Virus record (IMG/VR): IMGVR_UViG_3300024239_000013
Coordinates: 255,335 to 319,334 of that record
Length of the DNA stretch: 64,000 nt
Direction: 5' to 3' (one strand)
Both the position numbers and the translations under genes were made by a program. Shown here piece by piece: positions 4,911 through 54,831 of this stretch (position 1 is its first letter; every line of letters starts with the position of its first letter). The notes under the pieces are model-generated. The model had not been told where the DNA came from. It saw nothing but the letters and a program-made list of their open reading frames with translations, and searched no databases.

Positions 4911-5258
4911 TTAAAGAGTGTGTATGGTATATCCAAATTCTTCGGAATGCTCGTCTAAGAAGGTCTCAAAATTTTCTAAAAAATCCGGAGAAATGTTCTT
5001 ATAGCAAACTAGTATACCATCACACTTCGTACTATATATTCCTTGTAGTATTTTCTTGCGAATAGTGTAGTTTATTATAAATTCAGATTCATTAGATAAA
5101 TTGTCGATATCATATCCAAGTTCTCTTATTATTTTAGAAATATCTACTACATAAAAATCTGAGCCATGAGTTGATCTTTTCTTGGCTTCTTTTGGTGAAT
5201 ATCGGGATATGTAGAATTTTACAATAATTTTATTATGCATCGGATTCATTAGATTCAA
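4911..5258 (-). CDS. Hypothetical protein
   Basis: 115-aa ORF in tightly packed - strand run. Confidence 0.5.
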   Translation of the reverse strand: MNLMNPMHNKIIVKFYISRYSPKEAKKRSTHGSDFYVVDISKIIRELGYDIDNLSNESEFIINYTIRKKILQGIYSTKCDGILVCYKNISPDFLENFETFLDEHSEEFGYTIHTL

Positions 5259-5539: not shown

Positions 5540-6121
5540 TTAGATATCTATACTAAATCCTTTATTTTTACCGAAAACTGAATCATCCCTGTTATAGAGA
5601 TCCATTCCTACAACAAATTTAAAAAGCTTAAGGAATAGAGAAGGTATAAAAACATCCTTAACTTTAACCACATCATTAGCAGGGATAAATTGGAAAGTTG
5701 ACGATAACTCTTTATCTGAACCGTCCGTAATTGGCTCATTTCTTTTCATATCACTAACATCTATAGCAAAACAAGGATATTCCTTATCAATAAATTTAGA
5801 AGCGGTAACGGTACCTAAGAAATACCATTTATTATTATCCTGAATATCATACCCGGATTCCTCTTTTAGTTCTCTTTTTGCTGTTTGTAGATAGTCAGGA
5901 TCTTCATCTTCTGAAGTTCCAGTAATTAAAGTTATCGAATATCCACCTTCTCTAAATGGGTTTTTTTCTTTTAGTACACCTAACATCAGAGGTAACCCGT
6001 TATCATCCTTTATGAAAGGTAACAAGATAACAGTTTCAGTATTCGAGCATATTCCGATACTATTTTCTCTTTCAACGACATTAAAATTAGGAGAACTGTA
6101 TAAAATTTTTTCGTTATTCAT
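5540..6121 (-). CDS. Nudix hydrolase
   Basis: Nudix box GTSEDEDPDYLQTAKRELKEESGY. Confidence 0.85.
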   Translation of the reverse strand: MNNEKILYSSPNFNVVERENSIGICSNTETVILLPFIKDDNGLPLMLGVLKEKNPFREGGYSITLITGTSEDEDPDYLQTAKRELKEESGYDIQDNNKWYFLGTVTASKFIDKEYPCFAIDVSDMKRNEPITDGSDKELSSTFQFIPANDVVKVKDVFIPSLFLKLFKFVVGMDLYNRDDSVFGKNKGFSIDI

Positions 6122-8359: not shown

Positions 8360-8370
8360 TATATATCCAA
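8360..8370 (-). promoter_or_regulatory. Late promoter TTGGATATATA
   Basis: Exact 11-mer 16 nt upstream of ATG 8343. Confidence 0.7.
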
Positions 8371-9538: not shown

Positions 9539-10159
9539 TTATTTATCACTCTTACCAAAGAGTCCTTCCCAAAAAGATCCAAAAGAATTGGATTTTGTTT
9601 TTTCAGGATATTCTTTTACTAGCTGTTGCGATAGAGCATCCTTCATTTTTTCTTTACTTTCATCGTCAAGCTTATTGATAACATCTTTACCTACTGGTTC
9701 TTCTCCTAAAACTTTCAGAAAAAACTTAGTTAAATTTTCCTTACCCATTCTTTCCTGTAAACTTTCTCTTATTATGGAAGCTAACCATCCGTTAGGCATT
9801 ATACCAAATGGAGTATAAAGGGAATCGAAACCTTTTCTTTGGATATATTCTTGTACGGCTTGAGCTAAACGAGGAGCTAAAAATTGAGCATTAGCATTTT
9901 TACCGGTTAATAATCCTGGGATTTCTTTAATCTCTATGGCGTCTACAACTTCTTGAATTATAGTAGAGGCTTCACTATTTTCAGAGATCCCTAATTTCTC
10001 CAGAAGCGAAGCTGCAAGTTTTTGTTTAACGGTTTTAACAAAACCTGCTCCTAATAAAGGAAGCATCCTACCAAATATTGAGTTCATATCGGATATAAGA
10101 TCTTCATTAACCTCATTTGAATCGTATGAAAAATCTTCAAAACTTTTTATCTTTGACAT
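9539..10159 (-). CDS. Probable internal head protein
   Basis: MSKIKSFEDF...VNE leader; late promoter upstream. Confidence 0.55.
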   Translation of the reverse strand: MSKIKSFEDFSYDSNEVNEDLISDMNSIFGRMLPLLGAGFVKTVKQKLAASLLEKLGISENSEASTIIQEVVDAIEIKEIPGLLTGKNANAQFLAPRLAQAVQEYIQRKGFDSLYTPFGIMPNGWLASIIRESLQERMGKENLTKFFLKVLGEEPVGKDVINKLDDESKEKMKDALSQQLVKEYPEKTKSNSFGSFWEGLFGKSDK

Positions 10160-10179: not shown

Positions 10180-10190
10180 TATATATCCAA
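10180..10190 (-). promoter_or_regulatory. Late promoter TTGGATATATA
   Basis: Exact 11-mer 20 nt upstream of ATG 10159. Confidence 0.7.
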
Positions 10191-10212: not shown

Positions 10213-11619
10213 TTAGGCTATAGCTAAAAATAATTCAACAGCCTTTTGTCTATAAGTTAATTTATCCTTTTTTATTTCTGGATTTTTGAGAGCCTCTTTT
10301 TTTCTATTTATTATTGATTCTGGTAACATAGGACCAAAAGTATCTTTTAATATCTTTTTGTCCTTTCTCCATTCTAGAGGAAGATGCATTGCAAATCTAA
10401 CAATTTCTAAATTTAAAAACGGATTTCTTAATTCCAATGTATGAGCCATTGACATCTTATCAAGTCTTGGTAAATGATAGAAAGTAAGTTCTTCAAAAAT
10501 ATCAGATTTTTGTGAATCGTATTCATGAATTCTTGAATACCCTCCAAATAACTCATCTGCTCCATCTCCACTTAATACTATTCTATAATCAGTATTATTA
10601 CGAATTGATTCGAATAAATGATATTGGGGTATAACAGATCCCAAATCTATCGGGCTTTCGTTCCATTGTGCATATATAAGACCATTTTTTGCAGGATCCA
10701 TATCATAGCTAAGGAAATTTACAGGAGTGTCTAAATGAGCTCTTAAATCGTTTATAAAGGGAGTTTCCCCATTTTCTATACTAAACCAAGTAACCTTTGC
10801 ATCTAACTCTTTTAAAATAGCAGCAATTATAGAAGAATCCAATCCTCCGGAAACTAAAAGGGATATCGGATAATTTCTAGATACCAATCTATTCTTAACA
10901 CTTTCAAACATCTTATCCCAAAGCCAATCGACGTATGAGTCATAATCAGCACCTTCCAATTCAGGAATTGGAAGATCCCATAATCTATAATAGTCCTTGT
11001 AGGTTTGTTCAAATCCGGGTGATTGCATATTATGATAATAAATTGTATTAGGAAGAACTCTTTTTATATTTTTATATGCTGTTCTCGTATCCGTATTATA
11101 TCCCCATTTTCTAACTGAGCTTATAAAAATTTCATCTATATCAGAAAAATTAGTATAAAGTCCTTTTATCTCAGAGCAGATTTCTCCCAATTCATTTTTA
11201 TATAAAGATTTCTTTCCAAGAGGATCTGTAAAATATATAACGTCTCCGTTTTTTGAATTGTAGACCACAATAGACCAAAAACCATCCCATTTTACAATGT
11301 GAGGAACATACATAGCAACAAAAAATTCTAAATTACCTCCTTTATAATTTTTAAAAAGATCACATAGGTATTCAGTATCAGATTCAAATATATTCGAATC
11401 ATAATTAAAAATTTCACCATTAAACATCAGATAAATACCGTCGTTTATTTCTATTGGTTGGTTCCAATTATCACCGTCTAAAGTTTGTATAGGTAATCTA
11501 TGATGACATAGCGTTATGTCACCAAATGACTCTGTTGATCTTTCTATTCCCCTGTGTTTAATAGAGTCTAATATTCTATCATCAGAATTTCCTCTTGTAG
11601 TAAGTAATATTCCACACAT
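10213..11619 (-). CDS. asnB: Asparagine synthetase B-like glutamine amidotransferase
   Basis: MCGI (Ntn Cys2), HRG, FNGEIFNY, SGGLDSS, LSGDGADELFGGY, RLDKMSMAHTLELRNPFL. Confidence 0.9.
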   Translation of the reverse strand: MCGILLTTRGNSDDRILDSIKHRGIERSTESFGDITLCHHRLPIQTLDGDNWNQPIEINDGIYLMFNGEIFNYDSNIFESDTEYLCDLFKNYKGGNLEFFVAMYVPHIVKWDGFWSIVVYNSKNGDVIYFTDPLGKKSLYKNELGEICSEIKGLYTNFSDIDEIFISSVRKWGYNTDTRTAYKNIKRVLPNTIYYHNMQSPGFEQTYKDYYRLWDLPIPELEGADYDSYVDWLWDKMFESVKNRLVSRNYPISLLVSGGLDSSIIAAILKELDAKVTWFSIENGETPFINDLRAHLDTPVNFLSYDMDPAKNGLIYAQWNESPIDLGSVIPQYHLFESIRNNTDYRIVLSGDGADELFGGYSRIHEYDSQKSDIFEELTFYHLPRLDKMSMAHTLELRNPFLNLEIVRFAMHLPLEWRKDKKILKDTFGPMLPESIINRKKEALKNPEIKKDKLTYRQKAVELFLAIA

Positions 11620-11621
11620 AA

Positions 11622-12203
11622 TTATTTAGATAAAATTTTTTTAAAGTTTTTTGTTATGTTTTGTATCGAGGTCTCATCAAAATTATTTAGAAATCTATGT
11701 ATTTTAGCTATTTCATATTTTTCAAAAACAGAAATGACCTTTAAATATGATTCAATTTCTCTAGAATCTCCATCGATTCTATCCCATTGATCTTTATTCC
11801 TGTTATTTTTATTTGGATTGTCTCCATATAGGAATATAATCTCGATATTTTCCATTAGATTGAAATCCTTAATTAGCTTAATTTGATCCTCCATTTCAGA
11901 TTCAGATATTCTTCCTTCCATTATTCCCCAAGCAAGTACAGTAAGAATACCTCTATCGTGAATAAAAGAAAAAACATTTCCATTAGACTCAATAGGAACT
12001 AAATCCTTAAAAAGCTGCATTAACATAAGTTCTTTCCCCATAGAAAAAGCATGAGCTTCTTTACTATTTTGACTTTCTAGACCAAGTCTAGAAAAATAGC
12101 CAGCAAAGGAAAATTGATACCTTTGGATGTTGAATTTCTCCGATATTAATTTGGAGATGAATGTTTTTCCAGAATTTCTAGGACCTTCAAATACGTATAC
12201 CAT
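11622..12203 (-). CDS. Thymidylate-kinase-like dNMP kinase
   Basis: P-loop EGPRNSGKT and IHDRG; ATG 12203 preferred over TTG 12218. Confidence 0.75.
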   Translation of the reverse strand: MVYVFEGPRNSGKTFISKLISEKFNIQRYQFSFAGYFSRLGLESQNSKEAHAFSMGKELMLMQLFKDLVPIESNGNVFSFIHDRGILTVLAWGIMEGRISESEMEDQIKLIKDFNLMENIEIIFLYGDNPNKNNRNKDQWDRIDGDSREIESYLKVISVFEKYEIAKIHRFLNNFDETSIQNITKNFKKILSK

Positions 12204-12208
12204 GTATT

Positions 12209-12236
12209 TTATATCCAAAAAATACTAAATGTTTTC
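12209..12236 (-). promoter_or_regulatory. ECF-type promoter variant GAAAA-N17-ATATAA
   Basis: Same spacing as the GAAAC copies with one -35 mismatch; also resembles TTGGATATAAA. Confidence 0.4.
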
Positions 12237-12267
12237 AAAATAGTTATAAAAATTGACTTAAAATAAA

Positions 12268-12299
12268 AAAAAAAGAGGGATTTAATTCCCTCTTTTTTT
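12268..12299 (-). terminator. Intrinsic terminator
   Basis: AAAAGAGGGA-attaaa-TCCCTCTTTT followed by T run. Confidence 0.8.
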
Positions 12300-12302
12300 A
12301 TT

Positions 12303-14786
12303 TTAATTTTTGAATTCCTTACATTTGAAAGGTGATGTTTGTGGTACCTGTTCGAATGTGTTTGCATTCATTCTCTTTAGATGAGTTTTTATACTTGGAT
12401 ATATGTCTGCACCTATATAGTAACAGTTTTTGGCAAGAGATTTTCTTATAGGTGAATCTGGATTTACGTCAGAAAGTATTCTAAGACCAGCTAAGTCTTC
12501 GCTAACTTCACCATTTTTATTAACTTTCCTCTCTGCTATCTTTTTGGAAGGTGCTGTTATTATGGTAGATTTTTCAAACCCTAATAAATTACCGGTATCT
12601 TCATCTTCATTAGTAGCTGAAAACATTTGGTCTCTATTTATTCTTTTAGCGGTAGCTTCACCCAATAAATTATCATGAATCCATTTAACACAGCTGATGA
12701 ATTTATTACCATCGAAAGATATTGCGTTTGCTATCATCACTAAGAAGTTATTTATAGCAACAAAATCTTCTTTACCTAAATCTGGATTTTTTTCAGCAGT
12801 CTGTAATGCAATTTTAAATGCTTTTGCTATATCGCCTTTAAGGTCGTCATATTCTATGAAAGGTATACTCTTATTCTTAATAGAAGCACTCATCATTTCA
12901 TAAGAAGAGCTTAGATCTAATTCATCATTCTGTGAATTTTCTCTGAGTAATGATTTTATACCTTCGTATCTATATTCAGGTCTAATCATACCAAAAGTTT
13001 TCCACCCTTTTAAATAATTCTCTATAAAATCAACCGAATCATCATTACCTAAATTTTTTATCCCTCTGGCATCTGCCCATTTATTCCAGTTACATGGATT
13101 TTTTAGAGAACTTGAAGATAGATTTAGATTATAAACACCTCCAGAAAAAAAGAAATATGAGTATTCTTCAATATCTTTTTCTTTCACTATCTTTTCTATA
13201 CTGTCGTTCCAAGCTTTAATAAACTGTGGGCTATATGAAGATTTTAAAGATCCATCAGATTTAAGGAAATCCTCTTCCTCAACTTTTAGGTTATAAACAG
13301 ACCTTAAATTTTTTGATAGGGTCTTAATTCCTGAAGAAGATCCTCCTCTACTTGGGGATTCGTAAGTTTCACCCTTATCTGAGACATTTCCTCCTAAATT
13401 TTTATATTGAGTATTAAGCTCTTTTTCGAAATCTGAATTATTTATGACTATTTTACTTTCATATAACTTACTAAAATCATCTAGACTAACTACTGGACTA
13501 TATCCCTCATTCATCTTGTTTCTTATAATATCCAAAGATCTTTGTATCGATTTCTTATCCTTATCAGAAACCCAATCAGAAGAAAGAATATCATCTAAAA
13601 GAACCTTATCTATTTCACCATTGTTGTTTTTATTTCCTATTATTTTCTGAAGAGTAGAAACTACAGCAGTTGTTGCTGGACCATATTTACCATTAGGACC
13701 GCCTTTAGATTTTATCAATTTAGAAGCAGAAGGAATCCCATTTACAAGTGCATTTTGAACGGCATAAATAAGTCCGCTTCCTTTTATTTTTTTATCCGAA
13801 TCTGAGTCACCTCTTTTAAGTGGAAATACTGATTTAACTATCTGATTTTCTTCAGCTATTTTATCTTCTTTTATCTCCTTTGTTGTTATAGTATATTGTG
13901 CTTTAGCTCTAGTCAAAAGATCCAGTGCAGCATTAGTAAGATCTGTCACATCAGAATATGATGTATAGACTTCTTCATCATCTTCTAAATTCTGTAAAGA
14001 TCTATTAGCAGTTTGAATTAATGTTTTATTGAAATCCTCCTGGTATTTCTCAACTTGTTTCTCCAACTCCTCTAGTGCTTTTCTGTCTCTTTCTCCAAAT
14101 CCACCTCTGGTGGTATCCAAAACTTTTCTTTTCTCGTCAAGATCGATGAATGTTCTTTTCCAATCTCTACCATAACCATTTCTTTGGTCCTTTCCCTCTG
14201 CAGAAGTTATGAGATTATATAGAAGTTTTTTGAGATTCTCTATTCTTCCTTTATAACCGGTAAACATGGATTCTAATATAGGATTACCCAGGAATAATTC
14301 AGATTCGTCTACTTTCTTACTTTTTAATTCCTTCTCTGCTTCTTTTGCTATATTATCTAAAGTGTTTTGTAATTTTACTGGAGACTTTCTAAAACTTTTT
14401 AAAATAACCTCGTCCTTATCTTTACCGATCTCAGAAGCTCTCTTTAGCGCTTCTGCAAGCTTTTTAAGAGCTTCCAAATAAAGTCTCTTAGTTTCAGCGT
14501 ATTTAGAATTTAGCAAATCATTATCGTCTGCATAATCCAAAAGTTTAGCAGTTAACTCTTTAACATTCTTAGAATTACTAATATCTGAAAGTTTTACTCT
14601 CATAACATCAGGATTTCTATCTCTGGCAGGAGCCAAATCAAAAGTCAATATTTTGAAAGCATCTAGAGCATTATCAGATATCTTATTTAAAAGTGCATCT
14701 ACTTTTTCGTTCTCCAAAATTACTTCATAGTGCTCATTAAATAAAGATTTTGCTACTGGATTATTTAAGTATGGATTTTTTCTCAT
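12303..14786 (-). CDS. Large probable virion protein with peptidoglycan-binding-like domain
   Basis: 827 aa; AVQNAL...NGKYGPATTAVVSTLQK motif; several (L/I)xE sites. Confidence 0.5.
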   Translation of the reverse strand: MRKNPYLNNPVAKSLFNEHYEVILENEKVDALLNKISDNALDAFKILTFDLAPARDRNPDVMRVKLSDISNSKNVKELTAKLLDYADDNDLLNSKYAETKRLYLEALKKLAEALKRASEIGKDKDEVILKSFRKSPVKLQNTLDNIAKEAEKELKSKKVDESELFLGNPILESMFTGYKGRIENLKKLLYNLITSAEGKDQRNGYGRDWKRTFIDLDEKRKVLDTTRGGFGERDRKALEELEKQVEKYQEDFNKTLIQTANRSLQNLEDDEEVYTSYSDVTDLTNAALDLLTRAKAQYTITTKEIKEDKIAEENQIVKSVFPLKRGDSDSDKKIKGSGLIYAVQNALVNGIPSASKLIKSKGGPNGKYGPATTAVVSTLQKIIGNKNNNGEIDKVLLDDILSSDWVSDKDKKSIQRSLDIIRNKMNEGYSPVVSLDDFSKLYESKIVINNSDFEKELNTQYKNLGGNVSDKGETYESPSRGGSSSGIKTLSKNLRSVYNLKVEEEDFLKSDGSLKSSYSPQFIKAWNDSIEKIVKEKDIEEYSYFFFSGGVYNLNLSSSSLKNPCNWNKWADARGIKNLGNDDSVDFIENYLKGWKTFGMIRPEYRYEGIKSLLRENSQNDELDLSSSYEMMSASIKNKSIPFIEYDDLKGDIAKAFKIALQTAEKNPDLGKEDFVAINNFLVMIANAISFDGNKFISCVKWIHDNLLGEATAKRINRDQMFSATNEDEDTGNLLGFEKSTIITAPSKKIAERKVNKNGEVSEDLAGLRILSDVNPDSPIRKSLAKNCYYIGADIYPSIKTHLKRMNANTFEQVPQTSPFKCKEFKN

Positions 14787-14801: not shown

Positions 14802-15071
14802 TTAGTATATATTAGTATTTCCTGCATCTGGATTTGCTCTAATTTCCGCAGCTAAAGTTTTAAGAAGATTTGATATCTGTAAGTAAACAACTGATTGTTT
14901 ATTCAGAGATTCAATTTCAGAATTAACATTTCCTGGTTTTTTAGCTTTTTTAATTGCAGATATCTCAGAGAATTTTTTCGAAAGATCCAATTTCGTTTGT
15001 TCCATCTTAGATATTTCTGCTTCATTCATTTCAGAATATCCACCCATTTTAAATTCATTAAAACTAATCAT
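14802..15071 (-). CDS. Small probable internal head protein
   Basis: MISFNEF...MNEAE leader. Confidence 0.5.
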   Translation of the reverse strand: MISFNEFKMGGYSEMNEAEISKMEQTKLDLSKKFSEISAIKKAKKPGNVNSEIESLNKQSVVYLQISNLLKTLAAEIRANPDAGNTNIY

Positions 15072-17130: not shown

Positions 17131-17141
17131 TATATATCCAA
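17131..17141 (-). promoter_or_regulatory. Late promoter TTGGATATATA
   Basis: Exact 11-mer upstream of ATG 17104. Confidence 0.7.
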
Positions 17142-18995: not shown

Positions 18996-20708
18996 TTATG
19001 CTAGACCTCCTGCAGGTACATTAACAAAGAATGTTAAGTACATAGTTTCAGGTAACATACCAGCTTCAACTAGAGCGTATCTAGATTTAACTGCTATTTT
19101 AGGTGACATAGTACCTTCAGAGATTGTCTGAATTGACTCTGCCATCATATAAGGCATGAATTTAAGACCTGGTTCGTCGTCTCCACCTTTTCTACCAACT
19201 AATACTCTAGTATCTCCGTAGCTCATGTTTTGATCTACATAAACAGTCATACCAGCAAGAGATCCTACCGGATATAATGTACCGTTATTTTGAGTTAGAG
19301 TGTTAGAGAAAGGAGCAAAAGTGAATTGAGAGATGTCTTGAAGTGCACTTGCAACTGCAGCGTTTGTTACGATGAAGTTAGCTGGACCTCTTCTACCTCT
19401 GTTAGCTACTACGTTAGCAGCTGCAAGAATTCTAGAGAATAATCTTCTTTGTAAAGTTGATAAGTTCTCGTAAGAAGTTGATGCAGGACCTGCTGGAATA
19501 GCCATAGCTACACCTTGATCTGATTTATTAACGTAAGCTGCTGTTGTACCAGTAGATCCGTTAAGTACTAAGTTTAAGTTCAAGTTTTGGTTTTCAACGT
19601 TGTTGAATTGAACGTGGTTAGACCAACCTAGAGCAAATGCTCTTGAAAGGATGTGCTTGTTAATTGCTTGAGAAACCTCGTTAACTAATGCATTCTCGAT
19701 CATTGAAATAACGTCGATACCGAATTGTTTGTTAAGGTCTTGGATTTGCTCAGTTGTAACTGAAGCAGCAACTTGGAAAGTCTCAGCTTCTACGAACTTA
19801 GTGAAAGTAGAAAGACCCATTGAGTTATAGTAAGTAGATTCAGCTACTCCTCTTAACATTGGGTTATAAGTTTTAGTACCATCAACATAAGGTCCTTGCC
19901 AATCAGCATCGTTATTGAAACCAGCACCAGAGAATCCTTGGATGTGATCTTCTAAAGCTTTAACTAATTGAGCAACGTATCCGTTAACTGAAGTAGAAGT
20001 ACCAGTGTACATACCGCTAGTACCAACTTGTACTGAAGTACCGTTGACGATAGAAGCTATTGTATAGTTTTGAGTAACTCCAGCAACCTCGAAAATTGGG
20101 AAACCGTCAATTCTTGAAAGTCCAACGAAAGTTAAAGTTAAAGTACCACCGTTAACTACAGTGTAAGAAGTTCCTACTGTAAAAGTACCAGCTGTAGCAC
20201 CAGTAGCACCAGCAGCAGATCCTTGATAAACAGGGAATTTAATCATTGATGGAGCTTTTGCTAAAGCATCTGCAGCAGAAGCATCTGAGCCAGTAGCACC
20301 AGCTAATTTACCACCTGCATATACATAATCTAGATAAGATAAGATACCAGTTGGTCCTGACATAGGAATAACAGGAACGATATCAAACCCGATTGTTTTA
20401 GCAGCTACTTGAATAGCTAAAGGTAACAATGATGGGAATTTATCTCCTGAACCTTGCCAAGATGCGTTATAGAAACCAGCATTAGCACCAGTTGATAATC
20501 CACCTGCTCCTGGGAATGATGGAGGGGTTACGTTACCCATACCATTTACAACACCTAAAGAGTTATATGCACCCGCAGATTCGTTTAATGAGTGATAGTG
20601 ACAATATTTAGTTAACCACTCTTTTTTGCTTGAGTCAGTGATTCCTGCTTTACTCTCGATGATAGGAGACCAGGTTTCATAGATTTCTTGTTCGTTAATC
20701 AATTTCAT
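18996..20708 (-). CDS. gp23: Major capsid protein (T4 gp23-like)
   Basis: FPSLLPLAIQVAAKTIGFDIVPVIPMSGPTG, RRGPANFIVT, GLKFMPY, PKIAVKSRYAL; LNE|S candidate maturation site. Confidence 0.92.
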   Translation of the reverse strand: MKLINEQEIYETWSPIIESKAGITDSSKKEWLTKYCHYHSLNESAGAYNSLGVVNGMGNVTPPSFPGAGGLSTGANAGFYNASWQGSGDKFPSLLPLAIQVAAKTIGFDIVPVIPMSGPTGILSYLDYVYAGGKLAGATGSDASAADALAKAPSMIKFPVYQGSAAGATGATAGTFTVGTSYTVVNGGTLTLTFVGLSRIDGFPIFEVAGVTQNYTIASIVNGTSVQVGTSGMYTGTSTSVNGYVAQLVKALEDHIQGFSGAGFNNDADWQGPYVDGTKTYNPMLRGVAESTYYNSMGLSTFTKFVEAETFQVAASVTTEQIQDLNKQFGIDVISMIENALVNEVSQAINKHILSRAFALGWSNHVQFNNVENQNLNLNLVLNGSTGTTAAYVNKSDQGVAMAIPAGPASTSYENLSTLQRRLFSRILAAANVVANRGRRGPANFIVTNAAVASALQDISQFTFAPFSNTLTQNNGTLYPVGSLAGMTVYVDQNMSYGDTRVLVGRKGGDDEPGLKFMPYMMAESIQTISEGTMSPKIAVKSRYALVEAGMLPETMYLTFFVNVPAGGLA

Positions 20709-20737: not shown

Positions 20738-22726
20738 TTACCTTTTTGAGAATTTTTGCTCTAGTGCTGAAGCTATATAATTCATATAATCATTTGAATA
20801 AGCTTTTGGAGCATCGTCTTGAGCTAGATTTTCATTCTCGTTTAGTTTTTGAACACCAACTGGTTTAGTCCCTAGCTGTCTAGTAGACCAGAAGTTTTTG
20901 ATCTGGTAAGGTGTATCTAATCTATAGAAGTTACTTTGAGCAATGATAGATTGCTGGTGGCCTTCGTTAAGAGATTCCCAAACCTGAACATATTCTTCAG
21001 GCATCTCGTCGATAAACTTAAGTCCTGTTTTGTTAGTGTTCTCGTTAAGAGTTTCTTCTGCCTTCTGTGTGTCGGCTGGTGCTTCTACAAATCTAGAAGC
21101 TTCGTTTATATTTGATTCAGTTTTTTGTGTTTTAACTGATTCTATCAAATTGTCAATTTTTGTTGAAAGATTATCATAATCTCCAGCAAATCCAGATTCA
21201 TTTAAACCTGCTTTAGCTGAAAGATCTACGCTTTCTCTTAGTGATTCTTCTTTTTGCATAATTCCGTTATTAACGCTTTCTGCTATATATTCAGTATAAG
21301 ATATTGATCTTTTAACTTTTTCTGCTAAATATTCAGAATAATCCAATCCTCTATTAAGATTTTCAGCTAAATAATCAGAATATTCGATTGATTTGTTTAA
21401 GTTTTCTGCTAAGTACTCAGTATATTCAATTCCATCATTTAGTTTTTCTGCTACGTATTCAGTGTAGGCAATACCTTTATCTAAGTTTTCTGCAATATAT
21501 TCAGTGTAAGCAATACCTTTATCTACATTTTCTGCAAGATATTCAGCGTAGGCAATACCTTTATCTACATTTTCTGCAAGATATTCAGAATATTGGATAT
21601 TCTGATCAACTTTCTCTGCAAGATACTTAGAATATTCAATGGATTTATCTACATTTTCAGCAACATACTCAGAATAAGAAATGGATTTATCTACATTTTC
21701 AGCTAAATACTTAGAATAAGAAATATTCTTATCAAGATTTTCAGCTAAATATTTGCTGTAGCTGATACTAGAATCTAAATTCTCTGCAAGATATTCTCCG
21801 TACTTGATAGCATTATCTAAGTTTTCAGCAAGATATTCAGAATATTTTTCTAATTTTTTTACTCTTTCTTCTAGTGCTGAAGTATTAGAAGATTCATCAG
21901 ATTCTGTCAATTTTTCTCTTTGGTCTTTAATTTCTGCTATTGAACTTTTCATAGCATCCATCTCTTTTTTTAAGAAAATCGAATATCGATTAAGTTCTTC
22001 TGCAGTAACAAGTTCTTTATTCTCCATGAGGATTGTTTTATTTTTGTCTATTTTTGATACGAGTTTGTTAAATTCTTCGTTATTTTCAACTTTATATATC
22101 TTTACTGAGGATTCATTTTCTAGGCCTAATGATTCATTCACACAAATTAAATCAGATAATACACTAGAATTTCTCATTTCGAAAAATTCTTCAAATGTAT
22201 AACCTGCACTTTCATAAACTCTTTCAAGCTGTGCGTCTTGAAATCCAGGATCTGCAACTAGGTCGTAAGTAAATATCTTTTTAATTTGAACTTTCTTATC
22301 GTTACCTACCGCTCCTGCTGCTCTAGATGATATAGATAAAGGAACTCCAGCATCTACTAATTTCTTAGCAATCTGACCCGCTGGTGTATCTAGAAGTCTT
22401 ACTTTAATTCTAATTTCTCTAGTATTCTTATCGTAAGTAAGATCCGTAATTATGTGGGATATGTTTTTTAAAGAAACGTCAAACTTTTCTGGGTGGTCTA
22501 ATTCTCCAACCAGTCTTTTTTGAGCTATCTTATCTTTAAGATAATTTAAATGTGGAAGATATTCAGCTTCTTCATATATCCTATTGTTGTTGTTCTCTTT
22601 TCCGAAAACAGCAGCAATACCCTCAAGTACATATTCTTCAGAATCTGTTTTTTTAGATTCCAAAACCGTTTCCTGTCTTTCTAGAATAAAAACTAAATCT
22701 TCGTTCAATTTTTGAGTTGTCGGCAT
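20738..22726 (-). CDS. gp21: Prohead protease (gp21-like) fused to repeat-rich scaffold
   Basis: LEGIAAVFG.ENNNNRIY, LVGELDHP, GVPLSISSRAAG, TYDLVADPGF, followed by 14-aa repeats. Confidence 0.9.
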   Translation of the reverse strand: MPTTQKLNEDLVFILERQETVLESKKTDSEEYVLEGIAAVFGKENNNNRIYEEAEYLPHLNYLKDKIAQKRLVGELDHPEKFDVSLKNISHIITDLTYDKNTREIRIKVRLLDTPAGQIAKKLVDAGVPLSISSRAAGAVGNDKKVQIKKIFTYDLVADPGFQDAQLERVYESAGYTFEEFFEMRNSSVLSDLICVNESLGLENESSVKIYKVENNEEFNKLVSKIDKNKTILMENKELVTAEELNRYSIFLKKEMDAMKSSIAEIKDQREKLTESDESSNTSALEERVKKLEKYSEYLAENLDNAIKYGEYLAENLDSSISYSKYLAENLDKNISYSKYLAENVDKSISYSEYVAENVDKSIEYSKYLAEKVDQNIQYSEYLAENVDKGIAYAEYLAENVDKGIAYTEYIAENLDKGIAYTEYVAEKLNDGIEYTEYLAENLNKSIEYSDYLAENLNRGLDYSEYLAEKVKRSISYTEYIAESVNNGIMQKEESLRESVDLSAKAGLNESGFAGDYDNLSTKIDNLIESVKTQKTESNINEASRFVEAPADTQKAEETLNENTNKTGLKFIDEMPEEYVQVWESLNEGHQQSIIAQSNFYRLDTPYQIKNFWSTRQLGTKPVGVQKLNENENLAQDDAPKAYSNDYMNYIASALEQKFSKR
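21269..21856 (-). repeat. 14 tandem in-frame 42-bp repeats (14 aa, consensus KSIxYSEYLAENLD)
   Basis: Counted directly in the protein, from KLEKYSEYLAENLD to RSISYTEYIAESVN. Confidence 0.92.
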
Positions 22727-41851: not shown

Positions 41852-41862
41852 TATATATCCAA
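41852..41862 (-). promoter_or_regulatory. Late promoter TTGGATATATA
   Basis: Exact 11-mer upstream of ATG 41829. Confidence 0.7.
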
Positions 41863-46099: not shown

Positions 46100-46127
46100 T
46101 TATATCATCGTAAATCTTTATTGTTTC
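46100..46127 (-). promoter_or_regulatory. ECF-type promoter GAAAC-N17-ATATAA
   Basis: 13 nt upstream of ATG 46086. Confidence 0.6.
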
Positions 46128-46729: not shown

Positions 46730-47335
46730 TTAAAATTGGTTTTTTATTTTACTGTTTGAAAATTTTACTATTTCTATATTGGCTTCTACCAAGAACGATA
46801 AAGATTCAGGTTTTCTATAAACCTCTGAAAAAATAACTCTCTTTATACCAGATTGGATTATTAGTTTAGAACACTCATAACAGGGAGAAAGAGTTACATA
46901 TAAACTAGAACCCTCAGAACTCTGAGTTCCCTTCGCTAGCTTAGTTATCGCATTAGCTTCTGCGTGTAATACATAAGGAAGAGTTATATTATCCACATTT
47001 TCACAAATGTTCGGGAACCCTGTAGGAGATCCGTTATATCCGTCCGATATTATCGATTTGTCTTTAACTATTAAACATCCAACTTTCATTCGATTGCAAT
47101 GAGAATTTTTAGACCAAACCGAAGCCATTTCCAGGTAAATTGAATCTTTTTTATCCGTTACTTCCGAAAATTCACGATCGGACAATTCAGATTCAGAATA
47201 GAATACTTCTAATTTTTTATCTTCGTTAGTTTTAACCGACCAAAAGGGTAAAGACAGAAAATCATCCGTCATAAAAGACATGTCATCACAGACTCGTCTA
47301 TTAACATTTTCTGTAATTTTTATAGATTTTAACAT
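46730..47335 (-). CDS. dCMP deaminase
   Basis: KVGCLIVKD, DGYNG, LHAEANAI, LSPCYECSKLIIQSGI. Confidence 0.92.
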   Translation of the reverse strand: MLKSIKITENVNRRVCDDMSFMTDDFLSLPFWSVKTNEDKKLEVFYSESELSDREFSEVTDKKDSIYLEMASVWSKNSHCNRMKVGCLIVKDKSIISDGYNGSPTGFPNICENVDNITLPYVLHAEANAITKLAKGTQSSEGSSLYVTLSPCYECSKLIIQSGIKRVIFSEVYRKPESLSFLVEANIEIVKFSNSKIKNQF

Positions 47336-51477: not shown

Positions 51478-54400
51478 TTATACAAATTGTATAAATCCTC
51501 CTGATGATATTCCTCCTGTTTTACTAACAGTAAGTCTGTTGATGAATTTTTGAATTCCTTTTGCAGGTTCAACAATAACATCAATTATACCCATATTCAT
51601 ATCTATGATTGAAGGGGTGTTATTAGAAGCATCCATAATAGTCTGATATGCATAAATACCTCCTCCTGCTCTAACTCCATCAAGATAATTATCAACTAAA
51701 GTTTTTATCTCAAGTCTGATTGTGTCTTCATTGAAATCAAAAAGATAATTAGCTAGAATTTCTTGTACGTCAGTTTCGATACTAATTAAAAGATCTCTAA
51801 CATGTATAAGATTAAAAGCAGAGTTAACTTGTTGATAAGCAGTTTGGTTACCATAGATGGCTACACCAACCCCTCTTCTTTTTATAATTGGATTGATACC
51901 AAAAGGCTCTAAATTACCTCTATCTTCTTCATCGAAATCATATTCAACCCCTACTATATTAGATCCGCTTATTAAACCTCTTTTTTGACCAGCAATGATA
52001 GCATAAGGTTCTCCGTTAGAAAATTTTCTAAGGAAATTGTTAGAAACAAATGCTGCAGGAGGAACGTTTATATTTCTATTTCCCTCTCTTACTGTTATGT
52101 ATGGAGCATAGAAACCACAGAATTTAGCTCCATCTTCTTCGCTAGGTAAGCTGAAAGTGTAGGTTGGATTTAATGATAAATTACCTCCTTCCGTAATATA
52201 AGCTGTATTTAGCTTAGGATATGGGTTTACAGAAGTAGGAGCATCGGTAAATCTAGGGTCTGTACTAGCTCTAAATTGTTCCATAGAAGGAGCATTTATA
52301 ATAGCAAGTGCTTGTTGTCTTAGTTTAGCAAGTCTACTTAATTGATATTTAGAATTAGGTAGAATTTGACCAGAGAATGTGTCTACAATATATCTAAATG
52401 ATATAACGTCTTTAGAGGATAAAGTTTTAGCTATGTTTGTGTTGTACATAACATCTAAAATCTCTGATATTCTCGCGTCTGTTCCGTTAGGTCTATGCCA
52501 ATCATTCATACTAAATCCTGAAAGATATGAGAAATCAAAAGATCTAGTAAATTGAGCAATAGATGCAAATTTTTGAACTCTGACCCCATTAGCAGTAGAA
52601 TAGTATAATACAGGTCTTGAAGAAACTACTTTATAAATACCTGCTGTACTAGTTCTTGAAACTGATGTAATTTTAGCTAATCTATTTTGTCTGTTTCCAT
52701 TAACATTTTCACAAACATCCAAGTCTGTAGATACTACCAAGTCACCTACAGAAAATGGAACATTACCGTTCAAATCTAATCCAATAGTGAACGTATTAAC
52801 ATCTATTCTTGTACAATCAATAAATTGATTAATGGAACCATTTTTAGAAACGATATCAAATTTCTGAGTGTCTACTGGATATCCAATATTATCTGAAGCA
52901 TATGTCGTGCCAAAAGAAGGAACGTCTGTTATCGTAGCATCATCTAGATCTACATTGCTATAAGCCCTAGTATAAACTAGATTAAATTGGTCTCTATCTA
53001 CTGTAGATTCAAACCCCAAATATCTAACTTGCGTTCCTGCAGAGTTAATCCAAGCAAGATCCCCTGTAGTAATTTCCGAATATTTATGATCCTGATAAAG
53101 TTGGGATGCATTATAAGCTAAGATTGCATTAGAAATACCCAAAGGTGCTCCAGGCCCAGTTATTCCATTAGGTGTAAATATACTTTCTATATTAACATAA
53201 TCCGAATTACCAAATTGATAAGCTTTAGCGTAGAACGGTTGGCTACTTCCCGATGCTCCTGTATTATAAGAATTTAAATTATAAGTAGGGGTAACGGTTA
53301 TACCCTGAGATCTATAGAAAGGAGTATCTAAAGGATGTGTGAAATAAATTCTAAGTGCTCCAGAAACCTCCTTAGTTCCAGTAACTTTAAGTTTAACTAT
53401 ACTTGCTTCAGAGAATTGATTTATTAATGCACCTGTTAATCCCCCAGTGTATCCTGAAACTACTCCTAGTATAAATTTCTGATCGTTTGAAGAGGTAACA
53501 CTTAAGAAACTTTTAAGTTCAGCAACATCTGTATTATTTTGGATGTAACCTGCGGTAACACCATAAGTAGTTTTAGTTTGCAAATAATGTAAACCACTAT
53601 CATAAGCAGAAGGATCATAGATTTCAAAAGAATCAGAAACGATCCCTGCAGTAGCTCCTTCGGAACCGGTTAAAGTAAATAAAGTACCAACTTTAGTTCC
53701 TGTAGTAAATACAGTTGCTCCAGTTGGACTAGTAAATCCAGTAGCACCAGTTACACCAACTACTTTTTGAGAGTATAAGTAATCTGCAACTAAAACCTGG
53801 TCATAACTTAAGAAATTGATCTTTGGTGTTTTAAGGTCTCTGTCTCCTGTTAATTCATCAATTAAGTGGTTACCAACTAAATCTATTCTAGATGTATTTT
53901 GACAAATGCTATCAAATGCTTGTTCATCAATAGCACAGAATAACCCAGTTGACGGAGTATTATTATTAACTAGTGTTTGTATATACTGATTAACTCCATT
54001 TAAATCAACGAAATCTGGAATTATACATCCAGTAACATTCGTAACAATAGAAACATCAGGATCGTTTAGAAATTGATCAATTCTATCTTTTATAAATCCA
54101 TTATTGGTAAAATATTTACTCCATTTCGGATCTATTGAAAGTGCTTGATAATTTGTCCAGTTACCATAAACTGCTATAACATCAATAAAATAATCAGATA
54201 TGTAATCATAAGGGTGCATGAAACTAGGAACATTATCAGCACCATACCAATCTATTGCGAAAATATCATAACCTTTAAGCGGCTTATTAGAATCTGTAGA
54301 TTTTCTAACTATTACGCTCATAGGTGATTTACCGAGATTCGTTAAATTAAACAATTTACCTTGGTCTTCTACGCTTAGTGTTGCAAGGAAATAATTTGGA

Positions 54401-54831
54401 TCTGCAAACCAGAATCTCTCCTTATTATAATAAGAAGAATAAAGTCTGCTTGTTACAACACCATTATTTTCTTCAGTGTCAATTGAATATGATTGATATG
54501 TTGCTTTATCTGGGTTAGATGATTCTTCGTCGTCATTTAATCTTAATAGATTTAACGCAAAGACTGGTCCAGTATTTAGACATGTTAATATTGACCTTTG
54601 AAAGAAAGATCCTTTATTTTCTAGTGATCTATCGACGTCACCGAAAATAGATATAAGAGTTGTTACGTCTGGAATATAGACTGGTGTATTGAACGGTCCC
54701 TTATTAGAGAATCCTACAACTAATCTGATAGTCTGAGATGTTAATATTACATTTTGAGTTGTCTCAAATTCCAATGTATAAACTCCAGATGCTCTAAATT
54801 GAGAGTAGTCTATTTTTACCTTATTTGCCAT
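51478..54831 (-). CDS. gp18: Contractile tail sheath (gp18-like) with large insertion
   Basis: SGVYTLE, GFS.KGPFNTP, VPPAAFV, GINPI, GNQT, IHVRDLLI, VEPAKGI. Confidence 0.92.
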   Translation of the reverse strand: MANKVKIDYSQFRASGVYTLEFETTQNVILTSQTIRLVVGFSNKGPFNTPVYIPDVTTLISIFGDVDRSLENKGSFFQRSILTCLNTGPVFALNLLRLNDDEESSNPDKATYQSYSIDTEENNGVVTSRLYSSYYNKERFWFADPNYFLATLSVEDQGKLFNLTNLGKSPMSVIVRKSTDSNKPLKGYDIFAIDWYGADNVPSFMHPYDYISDYFIDVIAVYGNWTNYQALSIDPKWSKYFTNNGFIKDRIDQFLNDPDVSIVTNVTGCIIPDFVDLNGVNQYIQTLVNNNTPSTGLFCAIDEQAFDSICQNTSRIDLVGNHLIDELTGDRDLKTPKINFLSYDQVLVADYLYSQKVVGVTGATGFTSPTGATVFTTGTKVGTLFTLTGSEGATAGIVSDSFEIYDPSAYDSGLHYLQTKTTYGVTAGYIQNNTDVAELKSFLSVTSSNDQKFILGVVSGYTGGLTGALINQFSEASIVKLKVTGTKEVSGALRIYFTHPLDTPFYRSQGITVTPTYNLNSYNTGASGSSQPFYAKAYQFGNSDYVNIESIFTPNGITGPGAPLGISNAILAYNASQLYQDHKYSEITTGDLAWINSAGTQVRYLGFESTVDRDQFNLVYTRAYSNVDLDDATITDVPSFGTTYASDNIGYPVDTQKFDIVSKNGSINQFIDCTRIDVNTFTIGLDLNGNVPFSVGDLVVSTDLDVCENVNGNRQNRLAKITSVSRTSTAGIYKVVSSRPVLYYSTANGVRVQKFASIAQFTRSFDFSYLSGFSMNDWHRPNGTDARISEILDVMYNTNIAKTLSSKDVISFRYIVDTFSGQILPNSKYQLSRLAKLRQQALAIINAPSMEQFRASTDPRFTDAPTSVNPYPKLNTAYITEGGNLSLNPTYTFSLPSEEDGAKFCGFYAPYITVREGNRNINVPPAAFVSNNFLRKFSNGEPYAIIAGQKRGLISGSNIVGVEYDFDEEDRGNLEPFGINPIIKRRGVGVAIYGNQTAYQQVNSAFNLIHVRDLLISIETDVQEILANYLFDFNEDTIRLEIKTLVDNYLDGVRAGGGIYAYQTIMDASNNTPSIIDMNMGIIDVIVEPAKGIQKFINRLTVSKTGGISSGGFIQFV

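What the first reader, a model, noticed from the sequence alone, without database searches (positions are those of the whole stretch)
10213..12236. dNMP kinase plus AsnB-type amidotransferase two-gene operon: base modification or glycan amidation
Seen: a thymidylate-kinase-like gene 2 nt from an intact AsnB-like gene, bounded by a terminator and its own promoter. A second NMP kinase, a dCMP deaminase and a Nudix hydrolase are also in the window. Known: AsnB-fold enzymes amidate carboxylates using Gln and ATP, and their homologs act on cell-envelope glycans and natural products as well as Asp. Inference: coupling to a dNMP kinase suggests amidation of a carboxylated nucleotide for a modified DNA base; alternatively it amidates a virion sugar.
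Basis: partly seen in the sequence, partly recalled or inferred. Interest (0 to 1): 0.6.

Follow-up and report, generated by a model that had tools for sequence, protein, structure and literature searches.

The report
Phage kinase–amidotransferase genes for DNA-base modification
Two adjacent genes in a 319-kb phage, a small nucleotide-kinase-like protein and a shortened asparagine-synthetase-like enzyme, recur in many unrelated phages beside a cytosine-modifying enzyme, so they most likely help build an unusual, still unidentified DNA base rather than make asparagine.

Summary
The two genes are real: a 193-aa P-loop kinase-fold protein (11622..12203, minus strand) and, 2 nt downstream, an intact 468-aa AsnB-family amidotransferase (10213..11619). 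A strong terminator and a promoter-like motif precede them. The window is the virion structural module of a 319-kb jumbo phage of the Bacteroidota-infecting huge-phage lineage.

The AsnB-like protein belongs to a distinct short subfamily (~450 aa; 215 clusters at E<=1e-30; 420 IMG/VR loci). Its glutaminase and ATP sites are intact, but it scores below the AsnB equivalog cut-offs and lacks aspartate-site residues of E. coli and human AsnB.

A kinase lies directly upstream of it in 99 of 99 jumbo-type loci and in four of six unrelated small-phage loci. Outside the jumbo clade the pair sits in dNTP-supply modules, for example RNR–Kin–AsnB–TS-like–dUTPase–dCMP deaminase–DNA polymerase. The recurring TS-like partner carries the cytosine switch (N177→D) plus its own R143/H173 signature. 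It is also present about 100 kb away in this genome, and in 11 of 12 related large contigs.

Best reading: a T4-style nucleotide-level modified-cytosine pathway with an added glutamine- and ATP-dependent step. The chemistry is unknown.

The parts
12268..12299 (-). Intrinsic terminator ending the upstream 827-aa gene (12303..14786); it isolates the kinase/AsnB unit from upstream transcription
   Evidence: 13-bp stem, 4 GC pairs, T-run; sequence read directly. Related loci also show a hairpin here.
12204..12267 (-). Promoter region of the two-gene unit. It holds TTGGATATA at 12210..12218 (GGATATAAAATA, 6 nt before the ATG) and an imperfect TAttTTTtG.
   Evidence: Motif search gave 79 hits against 43.8 expected. 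Exact copies lie 6-35 nt before six gene starts in the window. ATATATA is 15-fold enriched upstream of genes. In most related loci this position holds a hairpin followed by TAnnTTTG. Promoter function is inferred, not shown.
11622..12203 (-). 193-aa P-loop nucleotide/nucleoside-kinase-fold protein ('Kin'). Invariant motifs are FEGxRNSGK(T/S), HDRG, NP and KDQWD. Proposed to be the dedicated dNMP kinase for the modified nucleotide.
   Evidence: Start fixed by alignment A1. AF2 pLDDT 87.8. Foldseek best matches are thymidylate kinases, TM 0.53-0.60. No Pfam hit. It lies directly upstream of AsnB-like in all 75 kinase loci and in 24/24 loci at 49-55% AsnB identity. A family member sits in the unrelated locus L127 (E 5.2e-30).
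10213..11619 (-). 468-aa AsnB-family glutamine amidotransferase / PP-loop ATP pyrophosphatase of a distinct short, phage-borne subfamily
   Evidence: Pfam and NCBIfam scans. Best PDB match is human ASNS at 1e-21. Residue mapping against E. coli AsnB. Subfamily delimited. Contexts.
46730..47335 (-). dCMP deaminase; a likely pathway associate, because it is a fixed member of the compact cassettes in other phages. It is preceded by a TAcaTTTG box.
   Evidence: PF00383 87.2 bits. Homologs follow the TS-like gene in L127, L128, L186 and L187. Upstream motif seen.

Best explanation
The two genes are the kinase and amidotransferase components of a nucleotide-level pathway that makes a non-canonical cytosine derivative for phage DNA. 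It follows the T4 hydroxymethylcytosine scheme with one extra step.

Proposed steps:
1. A dCMP-type thymidylate-synthase homolog (in this genome at G000 163110..163904, about 100 kb outside the window) modifies C5 of dCMP.
2. The AsnB-like enzyme uses glutamine-derived ammonia and ATP (adenylation by its PP-loop domain) to convert that nucleotide, or its immediate precursor, into an amide- or amine-bearing form.
3. The small P-loop kinase phosphorylates the modified dNMP, which host kinases would not accept, so that it can reach the triphosphate and be incorporated.
4. The dCMP deaminase, and in other phages a dUTPase or MazG-type pyrophosphatase, balance the pyrimidine pools.

Shown: gene identities at family or fold level, intact catalytic residues, conserved linkage and contexts, and the active-site signature of the TS-like partner.

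Inferred: the order of steps, action on free nucleotides, the substrate, and the product. My rough split within this explanation is: amidation of a C5-borne carboxylate about 40%, amination of an activated 5-hydroxymethyl group (to 5-aminomethyl-dC) about 35%, other about 25%.
For: 1. Catalytic machinery intact and invariant. Across 135 subfamily representatives, 112 start with MC (the Cys1 nucleophile). G75/E76, the SGGLDS PP-loop, D351, E352, R387, K429 and K449 are kept.
2. Not an ordinary AsnB. TIGR01536 scores 205 against a cut-off of 267, and NF006949 scores 142 against 499. E348 is Asp in 134/136, D384 is His, and TTxR is replaced by an invariant xDLGS. The human equivalents E364, D400 and R403 line the aspartate site, and E364A/Q are inactive (PMC6748925).
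3. Distinct subfamily. 215 clusters at E<=1e-30 against 13,390 at 1e-10, nearly all 420-480 aa. IMG/VR holds 420 loci.
4. Kin-AsnB adjacency. 38/38, 75/75 and 24/24 loci. Insertions occur on either side of the pair but never between the two genes.
5. Independent contexts:
- L124: TS-like-AsnB-dUTPase.
- L125: DUF1599-AsnB-dUTPase_2-C5 methylase, with TS-like nearby.
- L127: Kin-AsnB-dUTPase_2-TS-like-dCMP deaminase.
- L128: UDG/kinase fusion-AsnB-methylase-TS-like-PRA-PH-deaminase.
- L195: TS-like...kinase-AsnB-PRA-PH-methylase.
- L194: kinase-AsnB.
- L186: DnaB-RNR-Kin-AsnB-TS-like-dUTPase-dCMP deaminase-polB.

6. The TS-like partner is homologous to this genome's divergent 264-aa TS-like protein and not to its canonical ThyA. 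It is present in 11/12 large Kin-AsnB contigs and 8/8 records that are at least 90% complete.
7. The partner has C146, S167 and D169, with N177 replaced by Asp as in T4 dCMP hydroxymethylase, plus invariant R143 and H173. Published diagnostics for these positions are in PMC13326640.
8. The same paper shows that a TS homolog plus its cognate dNMP kinase is enough to put a modified dC into DNA.
9. T4's own dNMP kinase gene also lies among structural genes, so the head-module location here is not an objection.
Against: - No chemistry was tested, and no phage carrying the AsnB-like gene is in culture.
- No enzyme that would create a carboxylate on a pyrimidine was found.
- The kinase cannot be tied by sequence to Tmk or T4 gp1.
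- Kin, TS-like, dUTPase and dCMP deaminase are also simply the enzymes of dTTP supply, so part of the context is generic.
- The TS-like family also occurs without AsnB in about 120 isolated phages, so AsnB is an optional add-on.
- In this genome the pair lies in the late structural module and carries the motif shared with structural genes. If that motif is a late promoter, it fits a pre-replicative role poorly.
- I did not compare the aspartate-site residues with Bacillus-type AsnBs. From memory these may share SGDG-type motifs, so the residue argument alone is not proof of a changed substrate.
Confidence: 0.55

Rival explanations
1. Same cassette, but the AsnB-like enzyme aminates the C4 carbonyl of a uracil-type dNMP (dUMP or a 5-substituted dUMP) to the cytosine-type dNMP. 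It would do this by adenylating O4 and adding glutamine-derived ammonia. It would thus feed dCMP to the TS-like enzyme or convert a dU derivative to a dC derivative, and no amide-bearing base would result.
For: PP-loop enzymes outside the AsnB family adenylate nucleobase oxygens (GMP synthase, ThiI, TilS; established knowledge). The cassette combines enzymes that make dUMP (dUTPase, dCMP deaminase) with a dCMP-specific TS-like enzyme, so a dU-to-dC step would make metabolic sense. The aspartate-site residues are changed.
Against: No AsnB-family member is known to act on anything but a carboxylate (my knowledge). It would run opposite to the co-encoded dCMP deaminase. dCMP is available from host DNA breakdown.
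Confidence: 0.12
2. Post-replicative modification on DNA. The kinase phosphorylates a 5-hydroxymethylpyrimidine in DNA, as 5-HMUDK does. The AsnB-like enzyme then supplies ammonia or activation to replace the leaving group on the polymer.
For: The literature lists class-II GATase domains (PF13522/PF13537), P-loop kinases and AADTs as co-occurring thymidine-hypermodification machinery and notes uncharacterised amidotransferases in such clusters. The pair carries a motif shared with late structural genes. C5 DNA methylases neighbour the subfamily in four small-phage contexts: L125, L128, L195 and the P0277 contig.
Against: The kinase does not match PF18751. The genome has no PF18751 above noise and no AADT, PF18724. 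The kinase fold is closest to NMP and dN kinases. Neither protein has a recognisable DNA-binding domain. The compact cassettes sit between RNR and DNA polymerase with pool enzymes.
Confidence: 0.12
3. Ordinary metabolism: a plain asparagine synthetase carried as an auxiliary metabolic gene, next to an ordinary thymidylate kinase, with no functional link between them.
For: The best PDB and family matches are true asparagine synthetases. JGI pipelines name the homologs asparagine synthase. The genome has no other Thymidylate_kin hit, so the kinase could simply be its Tmk.
Against: Scores fall below both AsnB equivalog cut-offs. The aspartate-site residues of E. coli and human AsnB are missing throughout the subfamily. 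Linkage to kinases and to dCMP-type TS-like genes is tight, often with overlapping codons, in unrelated phages. No amino-acid-metabolism neighbours were seen anywhere. The protein is the most conserved gene of its neighbourhood (65-87%).
Confidence: 0.08
4. NAD+ reconstitution: the kinase is a nicotinamide/nicotinate riboside kinase, and the AsnB-like enzyme amidates a nicotinate nucleotide, acting as a NadE analogue.
For: Language-model neighbours of the kinase include AAA_28/NadR-like clusters. NadE uses the same adenylate-then-amidate chemistry (established knowledge). The genome has a NadV-type PRTase with an adjacent PRPP-synthetase-like gene, an NMNAT-motif protein and no NadE.
Against: Those NAD genes are about 130 kb away. 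None of the independent contexts of the subfamily contains any NAD gene; all are pyrimidine or replication contexts. NadV makes NMN directly, so no amidation step is needed.
Confidence: 0.03
5. Amidation of a virion glycan or a capsid protein carboxylate.
For: The genes lie about 7 kb from the major head protein gene, among probable head proteins. AsnB relatives amidate peptidoglycan and sugars or form lactams (NCBIfam hits TIGR03108 and NF033535).
Against: The head-module position is peculiar to the jumbo clade. Elsewhere the pair sits in replication modules. No glycosyltransferase or sugar-nucleotide genes were seen next to any member. Lasso and beta-lactam-type relatives lack Cys1, whereas this subfamily keeps it.
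Confidence: 0.03

Closest known systems
T4-type modified-cytosine nucleotide pathway (gp42 dCMP hydroxymethylase, gp1 dNMP kinase, gp56 dCTPase/dUTPase, Cd dCMP deaminase) and the related 5-hydroxy-dCMP pathway of RB69/DLP3
   Same: A TS homolog with Asp at the N177 switch position and no C-terminal tail. A dedicated small P-loop kinase. A dCMP deaminase and a dUTPase or MazG-type pyrophosphatase, placed with replication genes. The kinase gene sits among structural genes in both T4 and this phage.
   Different: An AsnB-family amidotransferase is inserted in the cassette, which no described pathway has. The TS homolog has R143/H173, whereas T4 has D143/G173 and the 5hodCMP synthases have N169. 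The kinase shows no sequence relation to gp1 beyond the P-loop. No DNA glycosyltransferase was noted.
Asparagine synthetase B (E. coli AsnB, human ASNS; TIGR01536 / NF006949)
   Same: Two-domain architecture: an Ntn glutaminase with Cys1, R49 and N74-G75-E76, and a PP-loop synthetase with SGGLDS, K429 and K449.
   Different: About 90 residues shorter at the C-terminus. Below the curated cut-offs. E348 is Asp, D384 is His, and the TTxR motif is absent. The context is nucleotide metabolism, not amino-acid metabolism.
Thymidine hypermodification systems (5-HMUDK PF18751 + AADT PF18724 +/- class-II GATase)
   Same: The combination of a P-loop kinase with a class-II GATase-domain protein, next to a TS-superfamily enzyme in phages.
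   Different: 5-HMUDK and AADT are absent here. The partner TS homolog is dCMP-type, not a dUMP hydroxymethylase. The kinase fold resembles NMP kinases. The contexts look pre-replicative.
Cassettes of isolated phages with the same TS-like family but no AsnB (Serratia phage Serbin gp53-gp49; Streptomyces phage Zuko gp73-gp77)
   Same: The order kinase - NTP pyrophosphatase - slot gene - TS-like (R143/H173/D177) - dCMP deaminase - DNA polymerase. Serbin's kinase is detectably related.
   Different: The slot before the TS-like gene holds unrelated unannotated proteins of 269 and 353 aa with no Pfam hit, instead of AsnB.

Membership tests
AsnB superfamily (Pfam Asn_synthase + class-II GATase) | N-terminal Ntn glutaminase domain with Cys1, plus a C-terminal PP-loop (SGGLDS) ATP pyrophosphatase domain | tested here: met
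   PF00733 1.9e-38, PF13522 and PF13537. C2, R41, N67-G68-E69 and S257-S262 aligned to E. coli C1, R49, N74-E76 and S234-S239.
Asparagine synthetase B proper (equivalog TIGR01536 / NF006949) | Score above the curated equivalog cut-off | tested here: not met
   TIGR01536 scores 205 bits against 267.1. NF006949 scores 142.5 against 499.
Asparagine synthetase B proper (equivalog TIGR01536 / NF006949) | Aspartate-site residues of the E. coli and human enzymes (E348/E364, D384/D400, TTxR motif) | tested here: not met
   Asp, His and (I/V)D-L-G-S respectively, invariant across the family. Roles of the human residues are from PMC6748925. Caveat: not compared with Bacillus-type AsnBs.
Thymidylate kinase (Pfam PF02223) | Sequence match to the family profile or to a bona fide member | tested here: not met
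   No Pfam or NCBIfam hit. No PF02223 hit anywhere in the genome. hhalign against E. coli Tmk gives 6.9% probability, P-loop only. PDB sequence and profile searches found nothing.
Thymidylate kinase (Pfam PF02223) | P-loop NMP-kinase fold with Walker A and a DR(Y/H)-type motif | tested here: inconclusive
   Foldseek best hits are TMP kinases, TM 0.53-0.60 and probability 1.0, but dN, shikimate and gluconate kinases score similarly. GPRNSGKT and HDRG are invariant.
T4 gp1-type dNMP kinase | Sequence relation to gp1 | tested here: not met
   hhalign probability 2.4%.
T4-type modified-dCMP pathway | TS homolog with catalytic Cys and Asp at the N177 (uracil/cytosine) switch | tested here: met
   C146 and D177 in all 10 complete partner sequences, including this genome's 264-aa protein.
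T4-type modified-dCMP pathway | Dedicated kinase, dCMP deaminase and dCTPase/dUTPase encoded with it | tested here: inconclusive
   All are present in the compact cassettes. In this genome the kinase and deaminase are present, but there is only a sub-threshold dUTPase_2-like ORF and no PF00692 hit.
T4-type modified-dCMP pathway | A non-canonical cytosine actually present in virion DNA | not testable with these tools
   Needs nucleoside LC-MS or native-DNA signal analysis.
5-HMUDK / AADT thymidine hypermodification | PF18751 kinase and PF18724 transferase present | tested here: not met
   PF18751 gives only 13.5 bits in another ORF, at the level of the control genomes. PF18724 gives no hit.
7-deazaguanine DNA modification (DpdA / Gat-QueC) | TGT-family DpdA in the genome | tested here: not met
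   PF01702 gives no hit.

The most novel reading that the evidence does not exclude
A widespread, phage-specific branch of the asparagine-synthetase family is the first of that family to act on a nucleotide. Working with an unusual dCMP-type thymidylate-synthase homolog (R143/H173) and a dedicated kinase, it makes a so far undescribed nitrogen-bearing C5-modified cytosine (carboxamide- or aminomethyl-type). That base replaces cytosine in the DNA of many environmental phages, including freshwater jumbo phages.
Probability: 0.35. Interest if true: 0.85.

Novelty: new variant of a known kind. Interest (0 to 1): 0.72.

Why it matters
Phage DNA hypermodifications defeat restriction and CRISPR defences, and have given useful enzymes and nucleotide chemistries. 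The known pyrimidine pathways start from TS homologs and then use kinases, glycosyltransferases or amino-acid transferases. An ATP- and glutamine-dependent AsnB-type step has not been characterised, although reviews of hypermodification clusters mention unassigned amidotransferases.

This analysis delimits the enzyme subfamily (215 clusters, 420 IMG/VR loci) and names its partners. These are a kinase family without a Pfam model and a TS-like family with a new active-site signature, which is also present in about 120 isolated phages such as Serbin, Zuko and Muddy. It also gives a three-gene set that can be expressed in E. coli, so the question can be tested directly.

It further shows that in jumbo phages a functional cassette can be scattered over 100 kb, so local neighbourhood alone would have missed the partner.

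Tried and rejected
- Near-identical DNA in deposited phages: none. AsnB-like relatives among isolates reach only about 23% identity. The kinase has no phage relative at E<1 except a marginal Tmk hit.
- PDB sequence and profile searches for the kinase: nothing meaningful.
- Synteny within the jumbo clade looked at first like evidence for coupling. The whole 12-kb region is collinear, so I discounted it.
- NAD hypothesis: followed through, then set aside because no independent context holds NAD genes.
- 7-deazaguanine: no TGT/DpdA.
- 5-HMUDK/AADT: absent.
- The extra 311-aa gene that overlaps the kinase start in L086-type loci, and the slot proteins Serbin gp51 and Zuko gp75: no Pfam family.
- Literature searches for phage AsnB, and for aminomethyl- or carbamoyl-cytosine: nothing relevant.
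- Iyer et al. 2013 (PMC3763556), the most likely place for a prior prediction, is not held, so prior prediction cannot be excluded.
- Sigma-70 promoter scan: not above shuffles (17 against 20.2).
- Not used because no claim needed them: complex prediction, the reads tools, and a second structure prediction.
- One mafft run timed out and was rerun with faster settings.
Full report
WHAT IS THERE. The window is the last 64 kb of a 319,334-bp IMG/VR virus record rated 100% complete. Nearly all genes run on the minus strand. Two minus-strand ORFs occupy the finding: 11622..12218 and 10213..11619. An alignment of 35 homologs places the real start of the first at the ATG at 12203, giving 193 aa. The stop of the first and the ATG of the second are 2 nt apart. 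A 13-bp-stem terminator (12299..12268) follows the upstream 827-aa gene. There is no terminator after the second gene.

GENOME CONTEXT. The window is the virion module. It holds the tail sheath (51478..54831), two portal-like paralogs, the prohead protease (20738..22726) and the major head protein (18996..20708). The head protein is about 44% identical to those of Lak and other huge uncultured phages, and 28-39% identical to Flavobacterium, Tenacibaculum and Chryseobacterium phages. This points to a Bacteroidota host. That fits the TAnnTTTG boxes (the Bacteroidota sigma-A -7 consensus, from my own knowledge) seen upstream of some genes. A second NMP kinase is not: the other Walker-A protein of the window is an AAA+ clamp loader.

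THE AsnB-LIKE PROTEIN. It has the two AsnB domains, and its best solved relative is human ASNS at 1e-21. It falls below both curated AsnB equivalog cut-offs. Mapped on E. coli AsnB, the glutaminase residues (C1, R49, N74-G75-E76) and the ATP and pyrophosphate residues (SGGLDS, K429, K449) are kept. But E348 is Asp, D384 is His, and the TTxR motif is replaced by (I/V)D-L-G-S. These changes are invariant in the clade and across 135 more distant representatives. The human equivalents E364, D400 and R403 line the aspartate site, and E364A/Q are inactive (PMC6748925). I did not compare with Bacillus-type AsnBs, so this alone does not prove a different substrate.

THE SUBFAMILY. A search of 1.84 billion cluster representatives shows that the protein belongs to a separate group. 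There are 215 clusters at E<=1e-30 against 13,390 at 1e-10. The best 150 are almost all 420-480 aa and match over their full length at 34-54% identity. IMG/VR holds 420 stretches encoding relatives. PHROGs lists the family as of unknown function.

THE KINASE-LIKE PROTEIN. It has no Pfam or NCBIfam hit and only a weak PHROG 'thymidylate kinase' match (2.3e-5). A confident AlphaFold model (pLDDT 87.8) matches thymidylate kinases best (TM 0.53-0.60, 16-18% identity). Deoxynucleoside, shikimate and gluconate kinases follow closely. Profile comparison with E. coli Tmk and T4 gp1 aligns only the P-loop. Language-model neighbours are AAA_28/NadR-like, dNK and Thymidylate_kin clusters. So it is a P-loop nucleotide or nucleoside kinase by fold, and its substrate cannot be read from sequence.

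LINKAGE INSIDE THE JUMBO LINEAGE. The kinase is directly upstream of AsnB in 38/38, 75/75 and 24/24 loci. Within the closest clade the whole neighbourhood is collinear, so this is weak evidence on its own. However, insertions of 2.4-3.8 kb occur upstream of the kinase and others occur downstream of the next genes, yet never between the two. AsnB is also the most conserved gene locally: 62-87% identity where its neighbours fall to 27-45%.

INDEPENDENT CONTEXTS. Subfamily members at 34-51% identity lie in unrelated, mostly small phages, always in replication and nucleotide modules:
- L124: DNA pol A ... TS-like (stop overlapping the AsnB start) - AsnB - dUTPase.
- L125: DUF1599 'nucleotide modification associated domain 1' - AsnB - dUTPase_2 - C5 DNA methylase ... 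TS-like.
- L127: kinase-family member (profile E 5.2e-30) - AsnB - dUTPase_2 - TS-like - dCMP deaminase.
- L128: UDG/TMPK-like fusion - AsnB - DNA methylase - TS-like - PRA-PH - dCMP deaminase.
- L195: pol A - TS-like ... TMPK-like kinase - AsnB - PRA-PH - methylase.
- L194: TMPK-like kinase - AsnB.
- L181, L182, L186, L187: Kin - AsnB - TS-like - dUTPase - dCMP deaminase. In L186 this lies between a class II ribonucleotide reductase and a family-B DNA polymerase.
Three contigs were too short to say anything about more distant partners, although the P0277 contig does show a C5 methylase and a dUTPase flanking AsnB.

THE THIRD PARTNER. The TS-like genes of these contexts are homologs of this genome's divergent 264-aa TS-like protein (G000 163110..163904; Pfam Thymidylat_synt only 19.3 bits) at up to 56% identity. 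They are not homologs of its canonical 408-aa ThyA (325.7 bits). That protein is found in 11 of 12 large contigs that carry Kin-AsnB, and in 8 of 8 records that are at least 90% complete. So the cassette is complete in the window's genome but dispersed.

The family keeps W80, Y94, C146, S167 and D169. It has Asp at N177, the uracil/cytosine switch, as in T4 dCMP hydroxymethylase. It has Thr/Ser at H147, no C-terminal tail, and invariant R143 and H173, which neither ThyA, T4 gp42 nor the D169N 5-hydroxy-dCMP synthases have.

The same family, with the same signature, occurs without AsnB in about 120 isolated phages. There the layout is kinase - pyrophosphatase - unannotated slot gene - TS-like - dCMP deaminase - polymerase, as in Serbin and Zuko. 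Serbin's kinase is detectably related to the kinase family here. AsnB thus looks like one of several alternative enzymes in a variable slot of a common dCMP-modifying cassette.

INTERPRETATION. The parts match the T4 logic for hydroxymethylcytosine: a TS homolog acting on dCMP, a dedicated dNMP kinase, a dCMP deaminase and a dCTPase/dUTPase. To these is added an enzyme that couples glutamine hydrolysis to ATP-dependent adenylation. A TS homolog plus its cognate dNMP kinase is known to be enough to load a modified dC into DNA (PMC13326640). I therefore take the pair to be part of a nucleotide-level modified-cytosine pathway (confidence 0.55). The AsnB-like step would install a glutamine-derived nitrogen on the C5 substituent or on a precursor.

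The reaction itself is inferred. No enzyme that makes a carboxylate was found, and amination of an activated hydroxymethyl group or of C4 are live alternatives. The head-module position is not an objection, since T4 gene 1 is likewise embedded among structural genes.

The promoter evidence is mixed. Most relatives have a hairpin followed by TAnnTTTG before the kinase. This window instead has the GGATATA-type motif that it shares with structural genes.

RIVALS. On-DNA modification of the 5-HMUDK kind is weakened by the absence of PF18751 and AADT, but it is not excluded, since GATases and P-loop kinases are reported together in such clusters. A plain asparagine synthetase is unlikely, for the reasons given above. 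The NAD idea rests only on chemical analogy and on distant NadV, PRPP-synthetase-like and NMNAT-like genes. The glycan or protein amidation idea has no contextual support.

NOVELTY. I found no description of this AsnB-like subfamily, its kinase, or the R143/H173 TS-like class in the searchable literature. The 2013 survey by Iyer and colleagues could not be read. I rate it a new variant of a known kind of system, namely nucleotide-level pyrimidine hypermodification.

Noticed in passing
G000:C1:163110-163904 (= L041:1321-2115, minus strand; outside the window): A divergent 264-aa thymidylate-synthase homolog with an active-site signature (R143, H173, D177, D169 in E. coli numbering) that matches none of the characterised classes. 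About 120 isolated phages carry the same family, all auto-annotated 'thymidylate synthase' (for example Serbin, Zuko, Muddy).
   Followed up: yes
G003:C1:396502-398409 (record of locus L012): The TS-like gene is split in frame (residues 1-184 and 179-263) inside one 637-aa open frame. This looks like an intein or another in-frame insertion in a conserved enzyme.
   Followed up: no
window 4928-4936, 8362-8370, 10182-10190, 12210-12218, 17133-17141, 41854-41862 (minus strand): TTGGATATA / (T/G)GATATATA lies 6-35 nt upstream of gene starts. ATATATA is present in 51 of 239 upstream regions of the genome (15-fold enrichment), including those of the sheath and protease genes. This may be a phage-specific, possibly late, promoter. 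A second class, TAnnTTTG (Bacteroidota -7 box), precedes the dCMP deaminase and a few others.
   Followed up: partly
window 46118-46726 (minus strand): An ECF-type sigma factor (Sigma70_r2 + r4_2) is encoded immediately downstream of the dCMP deaminase. It is a candidate reader of the GATATATA motif. A sigma-70-type gene also lies near the AsnB cassette in L128.
   Followed up: no
window 34441-36108 and 36113-37702 (minus strand): Two tandem paralogs both match the portal-protein family (phrog_213, 1.9e-62 and 7.2e-52).
   Followed up: no
window 17169-18905 (minus strand): A 578-aa protein next to the major head gene matches PHROG families labelled homing/HNH endonuclease over their full length (6e-103). 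The label is doubtful for a gene conserved at this position in the head module.
   Followed up: no
window 9539-10159 and 14802-15071; L063:6121-9899; L086:11978-12658: Several flanking proteins share an N-terminal 'M..I.SFEDF / F.EF' type motif, and the family is expanded by four extra copies in L063. These may be internal head proteins with a common targeting or cleavage signal.
   Followed up: no
G000:C1:133247-135700 (L122:5248-7701, minus strand): A NadV/NAMPT-type phosphoribosyltransferase (NF006629, 561 bits, NAMPT_N) lies next to a PRPP-synthetase-like protein that scores below all cut-offs. The pair resembles phage NAD+ reconstitution pathways (NARP1 Adps+Namat, or NARP2).
   Followed up: partly
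G000:C1:201181-203157 (L123:5182-7158, minus strand): A 658-aa protein with an N-terminal RNA-ligase-like region and a C-terminal stretch matching only the first ~45 positions of NMN adenylyltransferase / cytidylyltransferase models.
   Followed up: no
L086:9118-10053 (and related loci L087-L100): In the more distant jumbo relatives, an extra 311-aa gene with no Pfam family overlaps the kinase start, where closer relatives have a terminator and promoter. It may be an additional operon member.
   Followed up: partly
L192:4192-5001 (Serratia phage Serbin gp51); L193:3877-4938 (Streptomyces phage Zuko gp75): Unannotated proteins of 269 and 353 aa occupy the slot directly upstream of, and overlapping, the TS-like gene, where AsnB sits in other phages. 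They have no Pfam hit and are only marginally alike (E 0.004). They are candidates for alternative modifying enzymes.
   Followed up: partly
window 5540-6121 (minus strand): The Nudix protein is among the better conserved genes of the region (51-76% identity across relatives) and keeps its position about 6 kb downstream of AsnB in nearly all jumbo-type loci. Its role is unknown.
   Followed up: no
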